A stretch of 64,000 nucleotides of DNA from positions 186,001-250,000 of the IMG/VR virus record IMGVR_UViG_3300042907_001080. One strand, written 5' to 3'. Within the stretch, counting starts at the first letter, position 1; each line of letters opens with the position of its first letter. A model generated the notes under the pieces. The model searched no databases. It was given only the letters and a program-made list of their open reading frames with translations, and had not been told where the DNA came from. Of the stretch, positions 5,254 through 47,435 are shown in pieces. The translations under genes were made by a program, and so were the position numbers.

Positions 5254-7751
5254 GGTAATTTTTCTCCACGTTGCGGGAATGCAAGGTATTTATCCTCTAT
5301 TTCTCCGTCTATAATATCTATTATATAGCGATCTGCTACAAAGTCAATGGTTTTAAAATCAAAGCCACTGGCTTTGATTCTAGCTAATATATTTTCAGCC
5401 GGGCTGGCCGCTGCATCATTGTCCGATCCCGGCTTGCAATAGCACAGAGGCAAGGCTGATACATATCCTGTTTCAAAAGATGCTTGGTCTTGTGTGCTGC
5501 GCATCCATAAGGGCAAAAATTCTCGATCTCTGTCCCCTATTGCGCTGATGCGTGATCTCATGTTTTTAATAGAATTAGGAAACACTCGCTGATGATCACT
5601 GTCGCTGACCAAGGGAATGTCGCTGTCTATTTTGATACTGTCATAGCTGATCAATACCTTGCTGTTAATGTTATTGGGTAGATTCACTGTTTGGCTGATG
5701 CTGCGACCGTTTTTTTCTAGGTCGTCTATGATTTCTACATAGATGACTTCATAGATGGTCTCTTGTGTTACAGGATCTTTGGCCTTGGCAGTTTTCACTT
5801 GTCCAAATTTCAATCTCTTGTGATAATGATTGCGACTCATGGCCTGCACAAATTTCTCAGCCTTGACACTTTCTATACCTGCATATATCAAAACTCGAAG
5901 ATCTGTCTGCACACTGAAATTAACGTCACCATATCGATAGATGTCTGTGGGGCGGAATATTGTTGCATCAGTGATAAAATTGAACCACGCTAATCTTTTG
6001 GGCTTTGATTGCAGAGCTTTGACATAGAGATTGGCAAAAGTTTTATTGTTTGCAACCAACACAGATAAATTAAATGTGCGATTTAATGTGGCAAAATTCA
6101 CACTGTCTCTGGCTCGCACAGTAAATGTAAACTTGAGATCGAACGTTGTGGTAGCAGCGTCGAAGGTCGAGGAATAATCTCTACTGAGTGTAGAACTGTC
6201 TTCAGCGGGTGATAGGTTGTCTGTGCGTTCGAAAAATCTTGTTAGTCCTGGACCAGTGTCATCTGCAAACTGTTTGATCTTGCCCTGTATTGCACCTGTA
6301 GGCAAAAATTGTAGTCCAGCAGGGAGATTGCCTGACACCCATTCATAGCTGATTCTCCCGCCATATAGTAGACTGGTTGCTTGAATGTATTTGTCAGAAG
6401 CAGTGTTTGGTTTGATTGTTCCAAGATCACTGTCAGTGATCCATTCTACTGCGCTGTCGATTTCTCCGATCACAGTGACAGTGAAAGTTTTTTCAGTCTT
6501 TGAAGTGCTGGCTCGCCAATATTCTTCATCAGTAGGTAGTCTATTAAGATGAGTTTTCACACTGATATATGTTACCCCAATGAATTCCACAGCGTCATTG
6601 ATTTTGTAAGTGGTAGAGTTATTCCATGTGCCTTTATATAGATAAGACGTATAGGCCAACTCTGCAGGATAATTCACAGCACGGACAGTGAATTGATAAT
6701 TTCTTGAGATTCTAGCCTGATATGGCACAGCCCCTGCTATGTCACCTGTGGTAGTATCTAGTTCCATGCCAGGAGGCAGTTGACTCTGCGAACCGTCGGG
6801 ATTGGTAGGCAATAGAAAGTATGCGATAGTGCCGGATAACGTGGGAGGATCATAGACATCTAAAAATATAGTTACATAGTTATTGGCACGGAAGCGGCCA
6901 AGATCGCTGTCAGTGATCCAAATTGGCACACGAGCACTGCTGGCATCTGCTTGAAATATATTGGTGTCGACCTGCACTATTGAGTTATCGGCTTGTAGAA
7001 ACTCTTCAGTGACCACATAGATTTTAAACAGCCTAGTTTCGGTATACACTCCGTCAGTGACAGCTACTATGAAATTGTAGATCCTGCTGAGACGTCTAGG
7101 AGTTCTGCTGGGTTCATTGTAATCAAACACAGTGATGTCGTAGGTAAATGTGTCAAAACCATTGCCTCGAGCTTGTATAAAGTCTATGGGAAATACGTCT
7201 AAGGGTGCGGTGTCATAGCCACCTGAAGTTTCCAGGTTGTATTCTACGGCAAATATGGGATCGGTGAAACCTGATATTATACCACTCTTGCTGAGGCTGA
7301 GTCCAGGAGGCAATACTCCTCCATTGGGCACAAGATAAAATTCTAATACATCACTGGCAATGAGATCTGTGTCACGTGCTTCAAGTTGAAAGTCGACCGG
7401 TGCATTGTCTAATACAAAGTAAGCTTCTGCTGGGCCGACGTTTAAAAATCCTTCCTTGGTGAGCCATATAGGTCTGTCACTGCCATCCACAGCCAGCTTA
7501 AAAGTGCGGTCTTCAATGTCCACACCGTCCGATGCTCGAATCACAAATCTACTTTCTGTATAGACTTTTACTTCAGTGGGACTGCCTTTGATAGCCCCAT
7601 CGATCAGTTTGAGTCCACGAGGCAAGGCACCTGCGATTAAGCTGTATGAGACAGTGGCTGTGAGATTGGTTGCGGCCTGTAATTGTATATCAATAGGTAT
7701 ACGTTCAGTGAGTAAGCCTAGACTATCTGCAGGAGTGATCCATGTTATCAT
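5250..7751 (-). CDS. putative Ig-domain baseplate wedge-like protein
   Basis: Repeated He_PIG-like G.LP.GL.L...G.I.G units; T4-like baseplate context. Confidence 0.75.
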   Translation of the reverse strand: MITWITPADSLGLLTERIPIDIQLQAATNLTATVSYSLIAGALPRGLKLIDGAIKGSPTEVKVYTESRFVIRASDGVDIEDRTFKLAVDGSDRPIWLTKEGFLNVGPAEAYFVLDNAPVDFQLEARDTDLIASDVLEFYLVPNGGVLPPGLSLSKSGIISGFTDPIFAVEYNLETSGGYDTAPLDVFPIDFIQARGNGFDTFTYDITVFDYNEPSRTPRRLSRIYNFIVAVTDGVYTETRLFKIYVVTEEFLQADNSIVQVDTNIFQADASSARVPIWITDSDLGRFRANNYVTIFLDVYDPPTLSGTIAYFLLPTNPDGSQSQLPPGMELDTTTGDIAGAVPYQARISRNYQFTVRAVNYPAELAYTSYLYKGTWNNSTTYKINDAVEFIGVTYISVKTHLNRLPTDEEYWRASTSKTEKTFTVTVIGEIDSAVEWITDSDLGTIKPNTASDKYIQATSLLYGGRISYEWVSGNLPAGLQFLPTGAIQGKIKQFADDTGPGLTRFFERTDNLSPAEDSSTLSRDYSSTFDAATTTFDLKFTFTVRARDSVNFATLNRTFNLSVLVANNKTFANLYVKALQSKPKRLAWFNFITDATIFRPTDIYRYGDVNFSVQTDLRVLIYAGIESVKAEKFVQAMSRNHYHKRLKFGQVKTAKAKDPVTQETIYEVIYVEIIDDLEKNGRSISQTVNLPNNINSKVLISYDSIKIDSDIPLVSDSDHQRVFPNSIKNMRSRISAIGDRDREFLPLWMRSTQDQASFETGYVSALPLCYCKPGSDNDAAASPAENILARIKASGFDFKTIDFVADRYIIDIIDGEIEDKYLAFPQRGEKLP

Positions 7752-43769: not shown

Positions 43770-43961
43770 TTAGGCCTTGGCTTCTTTGCGGGCGTTTTTT
43801 TCTTCTGTGATTTCATTGCGACGAGCTTTAACTGCTTTGCCTACTTCTTGTAATGCTTTGCGAGCACGGGTGCCTGCGGCATTGTTACCTGCTGCAAATT
43901 TTGCGTCTTCTGCCAAGAATGCTTCCATTGCTGCTTTTAATTGTTCTACTGTGTTTGACAT
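43770..43961 (-). CDS. histone H1-like (Hc1 family) protein
   Basis: KF.AGNNAAGTRARKALQE..K..K.RR.EI. Confidence 0.8.
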   Translation of the reverse strand: MSNTVEQLKAAMEAFLAEDAKFAAGNNAAGTRARKALQEVGKAVKARRNEITEEKNARKEAKA

Positions 43962-44003
43962 AATGTTTTCCTTAAGTTATGTTCTACTACTTATAATAGT
44001 AAT

Positions 44004-44112
44004 TGGTGTGGTCGGTAGGATTCGAACCTACAAAGCGATGTCTAAGACGTTGCCCTTGCCCAAATGCGTTTCACAACGGACCGGAGGTATACCAAGTTCC
44101 ACTCACGACCAC
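44004..44112 (-). tRNA. atypical tRNA-like RNA (109 nt), Leu-like body, no canonical anticodon arm
   Basis: Acceptor GTGGTCG/CGACCAC plus A-CCA, T arm GTAGG-TTCGAAT-CCTAC, D loop GGAACTTGGTA; 53-nt central region. Confidence 0.7.
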
Positions 44113-44118
44113 ACATAC

Positions 44119-44147
44119 AGTATATAACCGCAAACGCAAAAGGTCAA
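44119..44147 (-). promoter_or_regulatory. sigma70 promoter for the tRNA-like RNA
   Basis: TTGACC-17nt-TATACT, 6 nt before the first acceptor-stem base. Confidence 0.8.
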
Positions 44148-44175: not shown

Positions 44176-45156
44176 ATGACACAAGACTTCACAAAGATAC
44201 CATTCCATAACATAACAAGATTTGGTCAACGCACCATGTTGCATCGCCCGTTATTTTCTACCAGTTGGATTTTGGGCCGTTTCTGTAATTATAACTGTTC
44301 TTACTGTTGGCCCTATGCTAGATCGGACAAGGTAGATCACCAGCCTTTAGAAGTATATACTAATACTGTAGATGAAATCAAACGACAGGCTCGACTAAAT
44401 GGCTTCAATGAATTCCATTGGAGTTTCAGTGGCGGTGAACCTACTGCTTACCGACAGCTACATGATTTGATTAAACACCTTGACGAAACAGAAAGCACAT
44501 ACCAAAGTATACACATGACAACCAATTTAAGTCCTGGAAGTAAATGGTGGAATACCTGGTGTGCCAACACAGCATTACTACAACGCAGAAGTATCACAGC
44601 ATCATTTCATGATGAGTTTGCTCGAGAGCAGGAATTCGGTGACAAGTGTCTACAGTTATTGCATGAGCGTGTGCATGTCACAGTCAATCAAGTAATGGTC
44701 CCGGAAAAGTTTTATGAGCTTTATGAACGCATGTCTCGGCTACATGCTCGTGGAATCAATGTTACGCTCAAACCGCAAAGTGATCCTACAGCGAGTCGTG
44801 TAGTCGATGGCTACACAACAGAAATGATTGATCTATTACAGACTGGATTTCCTCAAACATCACAAGGCGAAGACGTTTATCAAATAGCATTGTATGATAC
44901 AGACAACAAAGAATATTTGTTCGATCAAGCAGAAAGATTTAATGCTTTTGGTTTTAACAAATTCCAAGGTTGGAGTTGCAATAGTGGGTATCAAAGTGTT
45001 ATAATAAGAGGTAATGAAGTGAAACGATCATATAGCTGTCACGACCGACTATTAGGAACACTAGAGAGCTTTGAGCTTTTTAAAAAACCAACAGTTTGTA
45101 TAACACCTAGTTGTGTCAGCAGTGCTGATTCAAAGATACCAAAATGTATAAACTAG
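44176..45156 (+). CDS. radical SAM protein with C-terminal Cys-rich (twitch-like) domain
   Basis: CNYNCSYC, SGGEPT, TTN, C..G..SC...C...C. Confidence 0.92.
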   Translation: MTQDFTKIPFHNITRFGQRTMLHRPLFSTSWILGRFCNYNCSYCWPYARSDKVDHQPLEVYTNTVDEIKRQARLNGFNEFHWSFSGGEPTAYRQLHDLIKHLDETESTYQSIHMTTNLSPGSKWWNTWCANTALLQRRSITASFHDEFAREQEFGDKCLQLLHERVHVTVNQVMVPEKFYELYERMSRLHARGINVTLKPQSDPTASRVVDGYTTEMIDLLQTGFPQTSQGEDVYQIALYDTDNKEYLFDQAERFNAFGFNKFQGWSCNSGYQSVIIRGNEVKRSYSCHDRLLGTLESFELFKKPTVCITPSCVSSADSKIPKCIN

Positions 45157-46121: not shown

Positions 46122-46704
46122 TACAGAACACTTACATCACTGGATGCAAGCCATAAGACAAAGCCCAGATCCTATGAGGACCATGGATGCATTCTGGTCT
46201 GGACAACTTAAAAGCAAAGAATGGTTGATCTCAAATTTAAGAAAACACATTAATAAATTTGTAGGTATTGATATACATGGTGGCTGGGTTGGTGTACTAG
46301 CCAGTATGTTGTTCCAAAGTGATATCCCTATTATTAATATTCGTAGTGTTGATATTGACCCTACCTGCGAATCTATTGCAGTTAACATGAACAAGATTGA
46401 AGAAATGGTTGGCAAGTTTCGTGCTGTCACAGCAGACATGTGTGCTCTTCGCAGTGATGCAGATGTCATTATCAACACCAGTTGTGAACACATAACACAA
46501 GACCAATATGACATATGGTTAAGCGGAATGCCACATAGCAGCCTACTAGCATTGCAAAGCAATAATTATAATATAGATGAACATGTTAGGATTGCTAACA
46601 GTTTAGAAGAGTTTAAAAAACAATGCCATCTGGACAATATTTTGTATGCCGGGGAACTTGATTTGCCGTTGTACAAACGATTTATGATTATAGGAAAACA
46701 ATGA
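46111..46704 (+). CDS. class I SAM-dependent methyltransferase-like protein
   Basis: IHGGWVGVL, SVDIDP, INTSCEH. Confidence 0.75.
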   Translation: MLVDTEHLHHWMQAIRQSPDPMRTMDAFWSGQLKSKEWLISNLRKHINKFVGIDIHGGWVGVLASMLFQSDIPIINIRSVDIDPTCESIAVNMNKIEEMVGKFRAVTADMCALRSDADVIINTSCEHITQDQYDIWLSGMPHSSLLALQSNNYNIDEHVRIANSLEEFKKQCHLDNILYAGELDLPLYKRFMIIGKQ

Positions 46705-47435
46705 TAGAATTAGGGTTAGTTAAATGGTATAATGACGCAAAGAGATACGGGTTTATTAAAGCAGACTCGGATGGAGAATCTATTTTGGCACAGAGTCATT
46801 CTATTGTGGAAGAACCAAAGACTTTGAGAGAATTTCAACGTGTAACTTTTGAAAGATATGTAACTGATAATGGCCTAGAAGCACGTACTATAAATATCGC
46901 CATGAACCCAGATTTATCGATTTACGAACACGAAGTTATATCATTGAAAAAACAACGACTTCATCTTTCTTCATTTGTAGGACATGTCTTATTAGTGGTT
47001 AATACTGCCAGCCGATGCGGACTTACACCTCAGTACGAAGGATTAGAAAAATTATTTCAAAAATATAAAGATAAAAAATTTACAATCCTGGCATTTCCGA
47101 CAAACAATTTCGCAGGACAGGAGCCTAATACAAATGCCGAAATTTTAGATTTTTGTGAGACAAATTATAATGTAAGTTTTTATGTTATGGAAAAATCAAA
47201 TATTGTAGAACAGGATAGTTCAAGCCCTGCACAATTCGCCGAAACTGCACCTAGAGAAATAAATTCTTTTTATAAAGACCTTGCCACCAGAACAAATGTT
47301 TTACCGCAGTGGAATTTCCACAAGTATCTAATTAATCGTACGGGTTCTATTATTAAAAGTTTTGATCATTTGACTCAACCAGACAATGATGTATTAATTA
47401 ACGCAATCGAAGAATTTTTGGATAGTAACGTATGA
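46701..47435 (+). CDS. cold-shock domain / glutathione peroxidase fusion
   Basis: N-terminal GLVKWYNDAKRYGFI (CSD RNP1); C-terminal VNTASRCGLTPQY, AFPTNNF.GQEP, WNFHKYLI. Confidence 0.85.
   Translation: MIELGLVKWYNDAKRYGFIKADSDGESILAQSHSIVEEPKTLREFQRVTFERYVTDNGLEARTINIAMNPDLSIYEHEVISLKKQRLHLSSFVGHVLLVVNTASRCGLTPQYEGLEKLFQKYKDKKFTILAFPTNNFAGQEPNTNAEILDFCETNYNVSFYVMEKSNIVEQDSSSPAQFAETAPREINSFYKDLATRTNVLPQWNFHKYLINRTGSIIKSFDHLTQPDNDVLINAIEEFLDSNV

What the first reader, a model, noticed from the sequence alone, without database searches (positions are those of the whole stretch)
44004..44147. Oversized tRNA-like RNA with its own consensus promoter but no usable anticodon arm
Seen: a perfect 7-bp acceptor stem, discriminator A plus encoded CCA, a perfect T arm and a Leu-type D loop. 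Between the D and T arms lie 53 nt that do not form a 5-bp stem with 7-nt anticodon loop; they can form an extended GTCCG/TGGGC hairpin plus a variable-arm-like GTC-TTA-GAC hairpin. A TTGACC-17-TATACT promoter is positioned to start at about its first base, arguing against simple decay. Established: bacterial LeuRS relies largely on A73 and tertiary structure rather than the anticodon. Inference: it could be a decoy against anticodon nucleases or tRNA-sensing defences, an intron-containing tRNA, or a non-translational aminoacyl donor for the adjacent modification cluster.
Basis: partly seen in the sequence, partly recalled or inferred. Interest (0 to 1): 0.7.

Follow-up and report, generated by a model that had tools for sequence, protein, structure and literature searches.

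The report
Anticodon-less tRNA-Leu mimic of jumbo phages
This is a real, transcribed gene for a tRNA look-alike that keeps the amino-acid-accepting half of a leucine tRNA but has a capped hairpin where the anticodon should be; it is one member of a large, undescribed RNA family in uncultured freshwater jumbo phages, and what it does is still unknown.

Summary
On the minus strand, window 44004-44112 encodes a 109-nt tRNA-like RNA. A TTGACC-17-TATACT promoter ends exactly 6 nt before G1. It is not a one-off: about 180 viral contigs carry it, as 87 unique variants in two subgroups plus a third, more divergent type. The acceptor, T, central and variable helices all covary. A73 is invariant, and the promoter-to-G1 distance is the same in 176 of 176 loci. 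No variant has a usable anticodon loop. The central arm is a hairpin of about 11 layers, capped by GNGA, GAAA, GCAA or UUCG tetraloops or by other short loops. The D loop and the E. coli-type leucine identity set (A73, A15:U48, G18G19, A20a) are retained, and the nearest ordinary tRNAs are the phage's own tRNA-Leu genes. Contigs from eight freshwater metatranscriptomes cover the RNA. Rfam, default ARAGORN, 185,579 cellular genomes and 50,697 cultured-phage records hold no member. The intron reading and the link to the neighbouring radical-SAM genes are not supported. Best reading: a trans-acting, non-decoding tRNA-Leu mimic that host enzymes handle through its acceptor end. Its function is untested. 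The closest analogue is phage T4 RNAC, whose role is also unknown.

The parts
44119..44147 (-). Sigma-70-type promoter: -35 TTGACC (44147-44142), 17-nt spacer, -10 TATACT (44124-44119). It places the transcription start at about G1 (44112).
   Evidence: Promoter scan, 10 of 12 matches. In 176 of 176 related loci the -10 hexamer (TATAAT in 98, TATACT in 74) ends exactly 6 nt before G1, and the spacer is 17 nt in 162. Metatranscriptome depth falls to zero at or before 44112 in 5 of 8 runs.
44004..44112 (-). The 109-nt tRNA-like RNA, from G1 at 44112 to the A of CCA at 44004.
   Evidence: Sequence. The covariance model built from its relatives scores it 119.6 bits. There are 87 unique homologous variants. 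Metatranscriptome contigs cover it.
44106..44112 (-). Acceptor stem, 5' strand GUGGUCG (nt 1-7).
   Evidence: Pairs with 44008-44014. Across 87 variants 99.5% of cells are paired, and 5 of 7 pairs show changes on both sides, for example 3:70 as GC 48, AU 35, GU 4.
44084..44105 (-). D region (nt 8-29): U8, a variable nt 9, then invariant AGUGGAA...GG.A.ACC. The loop is Leu-type, with G18G19, A14, A15 and A20a equivalents. The stem is degenerate and there is one extra A after nt 9.
   Evidence: Invariant columns in A1 and A2. Near identity to the phage's tRNA-Leu(taa) D arm. The D-stem register cannot be settled, because every position is invariant.
44059..44085 (-). Central arm (nt 28-54), which replaces the anticodon arm. 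It has an outer stem UCC/GGG and an inner stem with a C-C mismatch and a bulged U, and is capped by the tetraloop G39-U40-G41-A42 (GNGA).
   Evidence: Pair counts on A1: helices 90.8% and 96.8% paired, 5 pairs changed on both sides, and 0 of 500 shuffles reached the observed values. The second loop base varies U, C, A or G. Subgroup 2 has UCCUCC/GGAGGG plus an AGUA/GAA internal motif and a UUCG or GCAA cap.
44033..44055 (-). Long variable arm (nt 58-80): an outer GGGC/GCUU stem, a 3x3 internal loop, an inner GUC/GAC stem and a UUA triloop.
   Evidence: Covariation GAC/GUC <-> GUC/GAC <-> GGC/GCC <-> GCU/AGC. The helices are 97-98% paired. Every one of the 87 variants folds to a hairpin here.
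44015..44031 (-). T arm GUAGG-UUCGAAU-CCUAC (nt 82-98).
   Evidence: 100% paired in 87 variants. Pair 50:64 occurs as UA 74, CG 12, AU 1, and pair 49:65 as GC 85, AU 2.
44004..44014 (-). Acceptor stem 3' strand CGACCAC (44014-44008), discriminator A73 (44007) and encoded CCA (44006-44004).
   Evidence: A73 and CCA are present in 87 of 87 variants of subgroups 1 and 2. The search pattern for subgroup 2 did not require them. In type 3, A73 is kept in all 4 variants and CCA in 1. Contigs from three runs start at 44004-44006.
43984..44003 (-). 3' trailer: a small A/U-rich hairpin (UUACUA-UUAUAAG-UAGUAG) with the conserved motif AUAAGUAG. It lies between the CCA and the Hc1 start codon and has no U-tract terminator.
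   Evidence: Folds of 79 distinct trailers. In subgroup 1 the stems differ but still pair: ACUA/UAGU, CUAC/GUAG, AUUCUA/UAGAAU, UCUCUA/UAGAGA. The hairpin is absent in subgroup 2. No terminator was found by the scan.
43770..43961 (-). Downstream gene on the same strand, starting 42 nt after the CCA: a 63-aa histone H1-like protein (Hc1). It is probably co-transcribed with the RNA.
   Evidence: Pfam PF07432, E = 2.3e-14. Present at about +42 nt in 98 of 110 loci. Metatranscriptome contigs bridge the RNA and Hc1: X1 43872-44094, X2 43946-44101, X4 43935-44026, X5 43935-44035.

Best explanation
What is shown:
- Window 44004-44112 (minus strand) is a functional, phage-encoded gene for a non-decoding tRNA mimic derived from a class II tRNA. 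Its nearest ordinary relatives are the phage's own tRNA-Leu genes.
- The promoter is positioned so that transcription should begin at about the first base of the acceptor stem. That would leave no 5' leader for RNase P to remove.
- The acceptor stem, T arm, D-loop/T-loop elbow, A73 and CCA are kept.
- The anticodon arm is replaced by a longer hairpin capped by a stable tetraloop, so there is no anticodon.
- The RNA belongs to a family with three types. All share the same promoter geometry, and they occupy at least two different genomic settings.
- It is present in environmental metatranscriptomes.

What is inferred:
- The 3' end is released from the read-through transcript by cleavage in the A/U-rich trailer, followed by trimming back to CCA.
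- The RNA folds into a tRNA-like L shape.
- Host enzymes that read only the top half of a tRNA accept it. Chief among them is LeuRS, whose E. coli-type identity set it retains, so it is probably leucylated.
- It then acts off the ribosome, in trans. It may be a decoy or competitor for proteins that bind tRNA acceptor ends or elbows, whether host defence or host housekeeping proteins. Or it may be a non-translational leucyl carrier.

The protein partner is not known.
For: Family and covariation:
- About 180 viral contigs hold it.
- Acceptor and T stems are 99.7% paired across 87 variants, 7 of 12 pairs change on both sides, and 0 of 500 shuffles reach the observed score. Slid controls pair only 29-50%.
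- The central and variable arms covary.

No anticodon:
- Every one of the 87 variants folds into a capped central hairpin plus a variable hairpin.
- ARAGORN and Rfam do not recognise a tRNA.

Leucine ancestry and identity:
- Model R1's best ordinary-tRNA hits are tRNA-Leu. In the phage's own genome tRNA-Leu(tag) scores 33.4 bits, ahead of Leu(taa) at 26.4 and Tyr at 26.1. In T4, tRNA-Leu scores 28.6 bits.
- The D arm matches the phage's tRNA-Leu(taa).
- A73, the G18G19 and A20a equivalents, and the A15 and U48 equivalents are invariant or nearly so.
- E. coli LeuRS needs exactly these elements. It still charges tRNA-Leu that lacks the anticodon and variable arms (PMC9976931).

Leaderless promoter: the -10 hexamer ends 6 nt before G1 in 176 of 176 loci.

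Independent gene module:
- Type 3 sits inside tRNA clusters with the same promoter geometry.
- In that contig the operon that follows the RNA in other phages keeps its own promoter, now without the RNA.
- The first gene downstream of the RNA differs between subgroups.

Expression: eight metatranscriptomes hold contigs over the RNA, and in most of them the neighbouring genes have little or no coverage.
Against: - No aminoacylation, processing or binding data exist. All expression evidence is from assembled contigs, which give no read-level ends and cannot fully exclude DNA carry-over.
- In 3 of 8 runs a contig from a related strain runs upstream across the promoter.
- The D stem is degenerate: an extra A and a U-C mismatch, both invariant. 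This could impair recognition by LeuRS.
- Four unique variants carry G3-U70, the alanine determinant, so the identity of the attached amino acid may not matter.
- Three of four type 3 variants lack an encoded CCA.
- No phage-encoded partner was found in the record, which is about 80% complete: no class I aaRS of the LeuRS type, CCA-adding enzyme, L/F-transferase, FemAB or Ro60.
- The complex prediction with LeuRS was not run by the tool.
- A catalytic toxin is hard to neutralise with a stoichiometric decoy.
Confidence: 0.5

Rival explanations
1. Protein-binding scaffold RNA. The tRNA-like fold provides stability and maturation, while the long central and variable arms bind a phage or host protein. 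Aminoacylation plays no part. It would work like a Y RNA with Ro60, or whatever T4 RNAC does.
For: - Subgroup 2 carries an AGUA/GAA (loop E / sarcin-ricin-like) internal motif, and other variants carry conserved UGUAAC(R)AAC loops in the central arm. Such motifs are typical protein or tertiary contact sites.
- The length of the central arm is conserved, at about 10-12 stacked layers, while its sequence is not.
- Invariant but non-canonical D-region bases suggest a specific reader.
- T4 RNAC has a similar layout.
- G3-U70 variants and type 3 copies without CCA argue that charging is not essential.
Against: - The tip of the central arm differs radically between and within subgroups (GNGA, GAAA, UUCG, GCAA, CAU and 10-12-nt loops). 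That is odd for a specific binding site.
- A73 is invariant in all three types, although the acceptor pairs change.
- No Ro60/TROVE gene is present.
- No co-varying protein partner was identified.
Confidence: 0.2
2. Cis-acting 5' module of the downstream operon. The promoter belongs to the operon. A fully paired 5' end starting at G1 would protect the mRNA, or the tRNA-like fold would direct a processing cut that defines the mRNA's 5' end.
For: - In subgroups 1 and 2 the RNA is always the first element of an operon on the same strand, with no terminator and with the next start codon 16-45 nt after the CCA.
- Contigs bridge the RNA and Hc1.
- A start exactly at G1 would leave no unpaired 5' nucleotides.
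- In subgroup 1 the trailer forms a small hairpin that would cap the processed mRNA.
Against: - Type 3 lies in tRNA clusters and is followed by tRNA genes, not by this operon.
- Relatives run the same operon from the same promoter with no RNA at all, as a leaderless mRNA.
- The first downstream gene differs: Hc1, a 204-aa protein, or a 109-aa signal-peptide protein.
- A73-CCA, G18G19 and the T loop are conserved far beyond what a 5' stem would need.
- Several contigs begin exactly at the CCA end.
Confidence: 0.12
3. Aminoacyl donor for the adjacent radical-SAM/SPASM modification cluster.
For: A divergent radical-SAM gene lies 63 nt upstream of G1 (start codon at 44176), and a SPASM-domain radical-SAM gene follows it. 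The adjacency is kept in 69 of the 80 closest radical-SAM loci.
Against: - The whole region keeps the same gene order in these related phages, so adjacency carries little weight.
- Type 3 is not next to these genes.
- Radical-SAM/SPASM enzymes are not known to use aminoacyl-tRNA (my own knowledge).
- No Fem-type or L/F-type transferase was found. PEARL/LanB-type enzymes were not searched for.
- The radical-SAM proteins match no specific NCBIfam family above its cut-off.
Confidence: 0.04
4. An unusual decoding tRNA: either an intron-containing tRNA, or one with an expanded 8-nt anticodon loop (UUGNGAAA) that reads special or quadruplet codons.
For: Some variants read UUGAGAAA, which is a Leu(GAG) anticodon loop plus one extra A.
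Against: - The middle 'anticodon' base is U, C, A or G among near-identical variants. A tRNA charged by an enzyme that does not read the anticodon would then change meaning from strain to strain.
- Pairs U37-A44 and U38-A43 close the loop into a GNGA tetraloop, and they covary in other variants.
- Subgroups 2 and 3 have UUCG, GCAA, GAAA or CAU caps.
- The stem is about twice the length of an anticodon stem.
- No bacterial machinery is known that splices a 7-nt intron (my own knowledge).
Confidence: 0.03
5. A decaying tRNA pseudogene with no function.
For: Its fold energy is not better than that of shuffled sequence, z = -1.13. One locus, L017, carries a copy truncated at the 5' end.
Against: Compensatory changes occur in four helices. 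Loop positions and promoter spacing are invariant in 176 loci. It is present in three diverged types and in metatranscriptomes.
Confidence: 0.01

Closest known systems
Phage T4 RNAC (species 1 RNA, rnaC) and RNAD
   Same: - A stable small RNA encoded by a T4-type phage. The window's phage has a Gp23-type capsid protein.
- RNAC has a tRNA T arm (CCGGG-UUCGAAU-CCCGG), an acceptor-like terminal stem, a long central hairpin in place of the anticodon arm, and a second long hairpin before the T arm.
- It lies in the tRNA cluster, as type 3 does here.
- Its function has been unknown for decades (PMC3014915, PMC9697503).
   Different: - Homology is not shown. Model R1 gives 17.3 bits, E = 0.018, on part of rnaC only.
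- RNAC has no D arm, has two U-U mismatches in its terminal stem and no encoded CCA. It is annotated in the T4 tRNA cluster with no promoter of its own, and that it is cut from the tRNA precursor is recalled from the older literature, not checked here.
- RNAC is classed as a late RNA. This family carries its own sigma-70-type promoter.
tRNA-like domain of tmRNA
   Same: An acceptor stem, T arm and D loop without an anticodon, with a long helix where the anticodon arm would be. tmRNA is charged by a synthetase that ignores the anticodon.
   Different: There is no G3-U70 in the window's copy, no tag reading frame and no pseudoknots, and the RNA is only 109 nt. ARAGORN's tmRNA search and Rfam find nothing.
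Bacterial Y-RNA-like YrlA with Rsr/Ro60
   Same: A non-coding RNA containing a tRNA-like module, also reported from phages (my own knowledge; PMC7824862, notes Ro/TROVE with a tRNA-like partner in some jumbo phages).
   Different: In YrlA the RNA ends lie in the Ro-binding stem, not in the acceptor-like stem, and there is no CCA acceptor end (my own knowledge). No TROVE gene is present in this genome, and there is no Rfam match.
Bacillus cereus tRNA-Other (a pseudo-tRNA)
   Same: A tRNA-derived RNA that does not function in translation but has a cellular role (PMC3399842, listed).
   Different: It is chromosomal and bacterial, and has an ordinary cloverleaf size. There is no sequence relation.
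Counter-defence phage tRNAs (T5 tRNA-Lys against PARIS; anticodon-loop variants)
   Same: Phage-encoded RNAs of the tRNA class whose value lies in conflict with tRNA-targeting host immunity (PMC11464382, PMC10264068).
   Different: Those are working, decoding tRNAs that replace cleaved host tRNAs. This RNA cannot decode, and it lacks the loop that anticodon nucleases recognise.

Membership tests
Canonical decoding tRNA | 7-bp acceptor stem, T arm with a GTTCRA loop, D loop with G18G19 | tested here: met
   Sequence. Conserved and covarying in 87 variants.
Canonical decoding tRNA | 5-bp anticodon stem with a 7-nt loop (U33, anticodon, purine 37) | tested here: not met
   The central arm has about 11 layers and a GNGA tetraloop. 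Other variants have UUCG, GCAA, GAAA or CAU caps. ARAGORN in default mode finds nothing.
Canonical decoding tRNA | Reaches the Rfam tRNA clan gathering score | tested here: not met
   No match at gathering score. The best clan hit is tRNA-Sec at 15.7 bits, against a threshold of 47.
LeuRS substrate (E. coli-type leucine identity) | Discriminator A73 | tested here: met
   87 of 87 variants, and all 4 type 3 variants. The requirement is stated in PMC9976931.
LeuRS substrate (E. coli-type leucine identity) | Tertiary set: U8:A14, A15:U48, G18G19 with the T loop, A20a | tested here: met
   The corresponding bases are invariant or nearly so in A2. They were placed by alignment to the phage's tRNA-Leu(taa). 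The 3D contacts themselves are inferred.
LeuRS substrate (E. coli-type leucine identity) | Is actually leucylated | not testable with these tools
An in vitro charging assay is needed.
Intron-containing tRNA | Removing the insert restores a conserved canonical anticodon arm in homologues | tested here: not met
   ARAGORN's 7-nt 'intron' leaves an 'anticodon' that varies (GUG, GCG, GAG, GGG), and it is absent in subgroups 2 and 3.
tmRNA | G3-U70, a tag-peptide frame, pseudoknots | tested here: not met
   The window's copy has G3-C70. ARAGORN's tmRNA mode and Rfam are negative.
tRNA-Sec | 8/5 or 9/4 acceptor/T geometry, a 6-bp D stem, a UCA anticodon | tested here: not met
   15.7 bits, E = 3.2. 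There is no UCA loop. A 9-bp extension of the acceptor stem is possible only in the window's subgroup.
YrlA / Y RNA | Ro60 (TROVE) partner and a Ro-binding terminal stem | tested here: not met
   No TROVE gene in the phage record, which is about 80% complete. No Rfam match.
T4 RNAC-type stable RNA | Layout: terminal acceptor-like stem, long central hairpin, second hairpin, tRNA T arm | tested here: met
   Fold of T4 rnaC compared. This shows resemblance of layout only.
T4 RNAC-type stable RNA | Detectable sequence and structure homology | tested here: inconclusive
   R1 scores 17.3 bits, E = 0.018, on L181:2907-3001. That is below T4 tRNA-Leu (28.6 bits) and tRNA-Ser (21.2 bits).

The most novel reading that the evidence does not exclude
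A previously unrecognised class of phage RNA: anticodon-less tRNA-Leu mimics transcribed without a 5' leader. They would be charged by the host LeuRS and work off the ribosome, for example by jamming or diverting proteins that act on tRNA acceptor ends, or by carrying leucine for a non-ribosomal reaction. They could be the functional counterparts of T4 RNAC, and so give a handle on a 50-year-old open question.
Probability: 0.3. Interest if true: 0.85.

Novelty: new variant of a known kind. Interest (0 to 1): 0.72.

Why it matters
Phage tRNA genes are now seen as weapons in conflicts over the host's tRNA pool. Every characterised case, however, is a working decoder.

This family differs in four ways:
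- It is large and strongly conserved.
- It is transcribed in the environment.
- It has kept everything an enzyme needs to recognise the acceptor end of tRNA-Leu.
- It has replaced the anticodon with an inert cap, in several different ways in different lineages.

That pattern implies selection for a tRNA that must not decode.

Working out its partner could reveal a new way for phages to manipulate, or hide from, tRNA-directed host functions. It could also suggest a role for the T4 RNAC and RNAD stable RNAs, whose functions are still unknown.

There is a practical point too. Standard annotation misses these genes: ARAGORN in default mode and Rfam both fail to find them. Phage tRNA-like gene counts are therefore too low.

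Tried and rejected
- **Intron reading.** Rejected because the 'anticodon' varies between close variants.
- **RNAalifold's alternative pairing** of CCU (columns 28-30) with RGG (columns 63-65). Rejected because G64 and G65 covary with the 3' strand of the variable arm in L026, L049 and L101.
It is weaker than the GNGA-capped register.
- **Cellular origin or attachment-site idea.** The scan of 185,579 species genomes gave one hit, a chance match at an ordinary tRNA-Pro.
- **Cultured-phage relatives by blastn.** None found for either subgroup.
- **Model R1 in four cultured relatives** (Phosso, Vibrio 2.275.O, PA5oct, GAP32). Only ordinary class II tRNAs, plus one oversized tRNA-like RNA in the Vibrio phage. 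A pattern derived from that RNA found only chance matches in viral contigs.
- **Phage-encoded partners.** No class I aaRS of the LeuRS type, CCA-adding enzyme, L/F-transferase, FemAB or Ro60.
- **LeuRS-RNA complex prediction.** The tool did not fold it, so it is no evidence either way.
- **AUAAGUA in the trailer as a late promoter.** The motif is not enriched genome-wide.
- **ACCUCC as a free anti-Shine-Dalgarno mimic.** Dropped because that stretch is paired inside the central stem.
- **Neighbouring proteins.** Pfam, PHROGs, NCBIfam and one protein-atlas search of the neighbours gave no functional link.
- **Literature.** Searches found no description of this family.
Full report
**1. What is at the coordinates**

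The feature is on the minus strand. Reading 44112 down to 44004 gives a 109-nt sequence. In order, it contains:
- a perfect 7-bp acceptor stem, GUGGUCG/CGACCAC;
- U8 and G9;
- a D region, AGUGGAACUUGGUAUACC;
- a 27-nt central hairpin;
- a 3-nt linker;
- a 23-nt second hairpin;
- UUU;
- a perfect T arm, GUAGG-UUCGAAU-CCUAC;
- A73 and an encoded CCA.

A TTGACC-17-TATACT promoter lies at 44147-44119. Its -10 hexamer ends 6 nt before G1.

Standard tools do not see a tRNA:
- ARAGORN in default mode finds none in the whole window.
- With introns allowed it forces 'tRNA-His(gtg)' with a 7-nt intron.
- Rfam 15 has no hit at gathering score. Its best weak hit is tRNA-Sec, 15.7 bits against a threshold of 47.

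The one correction concerns the register of the central hairpin (section 3).

**2. It is a member of a large family, not a one-off**

The window comes from a 281,658-bp virus record.
- The record has a T4-type major capsid protein, Pfam Gp23, E = 5.8e-99.
- By that protein its nearest cultured relatives are jumbo phages of Proteobacteria: Sinorhizobium phage Phosso 72%, Vibrio phage 2.275.O 70%, Pseudomonas phage PA5oct 67% and Cronobacter phage GAP32 67%.
- The genome has a separate cluster of 27 ordinary tRNA genes outside the window.

How the family was found:
- An exact search for the last 28 nt of the RNA found 110 viral contigs. All of them carry the same oversized layout.
It revealed a second subgroup with a different acceptor stem (GUAGACG/CGUCUAC) and a different central arm.
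- Together these give 87 unique variants.
- Starting instead from the neighbouring radical-SAM protein, at least 580 viral contigs encode a relative. Of the 80 closest loci, 69 have the RNA directly upstream, and one has it 1.7 kb away.
- One contig lacks the RNA at that position but carries a third, more divergent type inside its tRNA cluster. It scores 47.8 bits with model R1, well above ordinary tRNAs. Type 3 occurs in 8 contigs as 4 variants.

Where the family was not found:
- The same degenerate pattern over 185,579 cellular species genomes gave one hit, a chance match at an ordinary tRNA-Pro.
- blastn against 50,697 cultured-phage records found nothing for either subgroup.
- Literature searches turned up no description.

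**3. Structure, judged by covariation**

*Acceptor and T stems, 87 variants:*
- 99.7% of cells form standard pairs.
- 7 of 12 pairs show changes on both sides. Examples are 3:70 as GC 48, AU 35, GU 4; 5:68 as UA 42, AU 38; and 50:64 as UA 74, CG 12.
- None of 500 shuffles reaches the observed score. Slid controls pair only 29-50%.

*Central arm, subgroup 1 alignment (A1):*
- The best-supported structure is UCC/GGG on the outside. Inside it come a bulged U, G-U, G-U, U-A, a C-C mismatch, and then C-G, G-C, U-A, U-A around a GNGA tetraloop.
- The two helices are 90.8% and 96.8% paired, and 5 pairs change on both sides.
- The second base of the tetraloop is U, C, A or G among otherwise near-identical variants. 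That is expected for a GNRA cap and is incompatible with an anticodon.

*Variable arm:*
- It is a hairpin of about 9 pairs with a 3x3 internal loop and a triloop.
- It shows repeated compensatory exchanges: GAC/GUC, GUC/GAC, GGC/GCC, GCU/AGC.

*All 87 variants:*
- Folding the middle part of each gives the same two hairpins every time.
- The central arm ends in GNGA, GAAA, GCAA, UUCG or CUCG tetraloops, or in loops of 5-12 nt.
- Subgroup 2 has UCCUCC/GGAGGG followed by an AGUA/GAA internal motif.
- Type 3 has a 4+7-bp arm with a CAU triloop or other short caps.
- No variant offers a 7-nt loop with U33 at the end of a 5-bp stem.

*What cannot be settled:*
- The D-stem register is unresolved, because every base there is invariant.
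- By alignment with tRNA-Leu the stem is degenerate: G-U, a U-C mismatch, G-C, and one inserted A.

**4. Descent from tRNA-Leu and the leucine identity set**

- The D arm is almost the same as that of the phage's own tRNA-Leu(taa).
- Model R1 was built from subgroup 1. It scores the window's copy 119.6 bits and subgroup 2 copies 71-85 bits.
- Among ordinary tRNAs, R1 ranks tRNA-Leu first in both genomes tested. In the phage's own genome the scores are Leu(tag) 33.4, Leu(taa) 26.4 and Tyr 26.1 bits. In T4 they are tRNA-Leu 28.6 and tRNA-Ser 21.2 bits.
- The identity review PMC9976931 states the following for E. coli. Leucine identity rests on A73, the A15-U48 pair, G18G19 and A20a. It does not rest on the anticodon or the variable arm. 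tRNA-Leu lacking both of those arms is still charged.
- The equivalents of all these elements are invariant or nearly so in the family, and they are recognisable in type 3.
- That the RNA is really charged remains an inference.

**5. Transcription**

*Promoter geometry:*
- In 176 of 176 loci with enough upstream sequence, a -10 hexamer ends exactly 6 nt before G1. It is TATAAT in 98 loci and TATACT in 74.
- The spacer is 17 nt in 162 loci.
- Many subgroup 2 and type 3 copies have the full TTGACA-17-TATAAT consensus.
- This geometry predicts a primary transcript that begins at the mature 5' end, so no RNase P cut would be needed.

*Metatranscriptomes:*
- Twenty-three public runs hold part of the stretch, most of them freshwater metatranscriptomes.
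- Contigs from eight runs were laid on the window.
- All eight cover the RNA. In most of them the neighbouring genes have little or no coverage.
- In five runs (X1, X2, X4, X5, X16) coverage stops at or just before 44112.
- In three runs (X3, X7, X13) a contig from a related strain continues 36-80 nt upstream.
- Contigs bridge the RNA and the downstream Hc1 gene (X1, X2, X4, X5, X13). Others begin exactly at the CCA end: X4 44004-44102, X16 44004-44093 and X5 44006-44094.
- This fits a co-transcript that is processed to a discrete RNA. However, contigs give no read-level ends and cannot fully exclude DNA carry-over.

**6. Genomic setting**

In subgroups 1 and 2 the order is: divergent radical-SAM gene, promoter, RNA, a small gene, then a conserved 163-186-aa protein and further genes.

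The small gene differs between lineages:
- In the window it is a histone H1-like Hc1 gene at 43770-43961.
- In some subgroup 1 contigs two extra genes come first.
- In subgroup 2 it encodes a 109-aa protein with a signal-peptide-like N-terminus.

Two further observations bear on whether the RNA is tied to this operon:
- In a relative without the RNA at this site, the same promoter sits 6 nt before the ATG of the conserved protein. That implies a leaderless mRNA.
- That same contig carries the type 3 RNA in its tRNA cluster, with its own copy of the promoter geometry, followed by tRNA-Ser.

The promoter plus RNA therefore behaves as an independent module. This weighs against a purely cis-acting role, and against a functional tie to the radical-SAM cluster.

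No candidate partner was found in the phage record, which is about 80% complete. Searches for a class I aaRS of the LeuRS type, a CCA-adding enzyme, L/F-transferase, FemAB and Ro60 were all negative.

**7. Most likely mechanism**

*Shown:*
- It is a conserved, covarying, transcribed RNA gene.
- It retains the tRNA top half and the leucine identity set.
- It has no anticodon.
- It has a leaderless promoter and is a portable module.

*Inferred:*
- The 3' end is released from the read-through transcript in the A/U-rich trailer.
- The RNA adopts an L-shaped fold.
- The host LeuRS, and probably other enzymes that read the acceptor end or elbow, accept it.
- It acts in trans, off the ribosome, as a competitor or decoy, or as a non-translational leucyl carrier.

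I put this at 0.5. The main rival is a protein-binding scaffold that does not depend on charging, at 0.2. It is favoured by three things: the loop-E-like motif of subgroup 2, the invariant odd D region, and the G3-U70 and CCA-less variants. A cis-acting leader role is at 0.12. The remaining rivals are each under 0.05.

**8. Comparison with known RNAs**

- The closest analogue in layout and phage lineage is T4 RNAC. It has an acceptor-like stem, a long central hairpin, a second hairpin and a tRNA T arm, and it sits in the tRNA cluster. Its role is still unknown. Homology is not established: 17.3 bits, E = 0.018.
- The RNA is not a tmRNA, a Y RNA, a tRNA-Sec or an intron-containing tRNA. In each case a defining feature was tested and not met.
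- I file it as a new variant of a known kind, namely phage tRNA-like stable RNAs.

**9. Limits**

- There are no wet-lab data.
- The host is unknown.
- Expression evidence is from assembled contigs only.
- The complex prediction with LeuRS was not run by the tool.
- The D-stem register and the 3D fold are unresolved.

Noticed in passing
L291:1501-1612 (+); also L296-L303: A third, divergent type of the same RNA lies inside phage tRNA clusters. It has TTGACA-17-TATAAT, then 6 nt, then G1; acceptor GUAGCCG/CGGCUAC; A73; a central arm of 4+7 bp with a CAU triloop; and T loop UUCGAAG. Three of its four variants have no encoded CCA.
   Followed up: partly
L254:1445-1500 (minus strand): In a relative that lacks the RNA at this site, the same consensus promoter ends 6 nt before the ATG of the conserved 182-aa gene. 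That implies a leaderless mRNA with no room for a Shine-Dalgarno sequence.
   Followed up: partly
L190:1501-1635 (+) = MG592671.1 210989-211123: Cultured Vibrio phage 2.275.O carries a 135-nt tRNA-like gene that is unannotated and not detected by ARAGORN. It has a canonical Leu-type D arm, a 5-bp stem with a 6-nt loop GCGAAA instead of an anticodon loop, a variable arm of about 60 nt and A73, but no CCA. A strong hairpin follows it. The fold z-score is -3.08.
   Followed up: partly
L193:2452-2570 (+) = MG592671.1 171224-171342: The same Vibrio phage has a second oversized (119-nt) tRNA-like sequence with G3-U70 and A73 (alanine-type acceptor features) and a normal T arm. ARAGORN does not call it as a tRNA or a tmRNA.
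   Followed up: no
window 43984-44003 (minus strand): The trailer directly after the CCA forms a small A/U-rich hairpin with the conserved motif AUAAGUAG. In subgroup 1 relatives the stem sequence differs but still pairs. Subgroup 2 instead has a U-run (UUUUUAAC) after the CCA. Genome-wide counts did not support reading the motif as a late promoter.
   Followed up: partly
L113, L126, L168, L177 (subgroup 2 variants): Four unique variants have acceptor GUGGACG/CGUCUAC, which gives G3-U70, the alanine identity pair. They are apparently intermediates between G3-C70 and A3-U70. Two further variants (L151, L152) have an A5-C68 mismatch.
   Followed up: no
L017 (minus strand, around locus position 6074-6190): A truncated copy of the RNA. 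The first 22 nt or so and the promoter are replaced by unrelated sequence ending in a terminator-like hairpin plus a U-run. The rest, from the D loop to the CCA, is intact.
   Followed up: no
window 46701-47435 (+): A single 244-aa ORF fuses an N-terminal cold-shock domain (PF00313) to a glutathione peroxidase domain (PF00255). This is an unusual combination for a phage gene.
   Followed up: no
own genome G000:C1:269708-269799 (outside the window): ARAGORN calls a 92-nt tRNA-Ile(tat) with a long extra arm, which is unusual for a class I tRNA. It also calls a low-G+C 'tRNA-Glu' at 160512-160587 that looks like a false positive.
   Followed up: no
L112:3206-3424 (+); L254:512-730 (-): Relatives of this phage encode a 72-aa homologue of translation initiation factor IF-1 (PF01176, E = 1.7e-19 for the L112 copy; the L254 copy was recognised by its sequence), a few genes downstream of the RNA.
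   Followed up: no
window 44102 (run X4, record 23): A metatranscriptome contig covers 44004-44102 exactly and then runs straight into Illumina adapter sequence. The cDNA inserts therefore ended at RNA nt 11. This could be a reverse-transcription stop at a modified or structured position near nt 9-10, or it could be chance.
   Followed up: no
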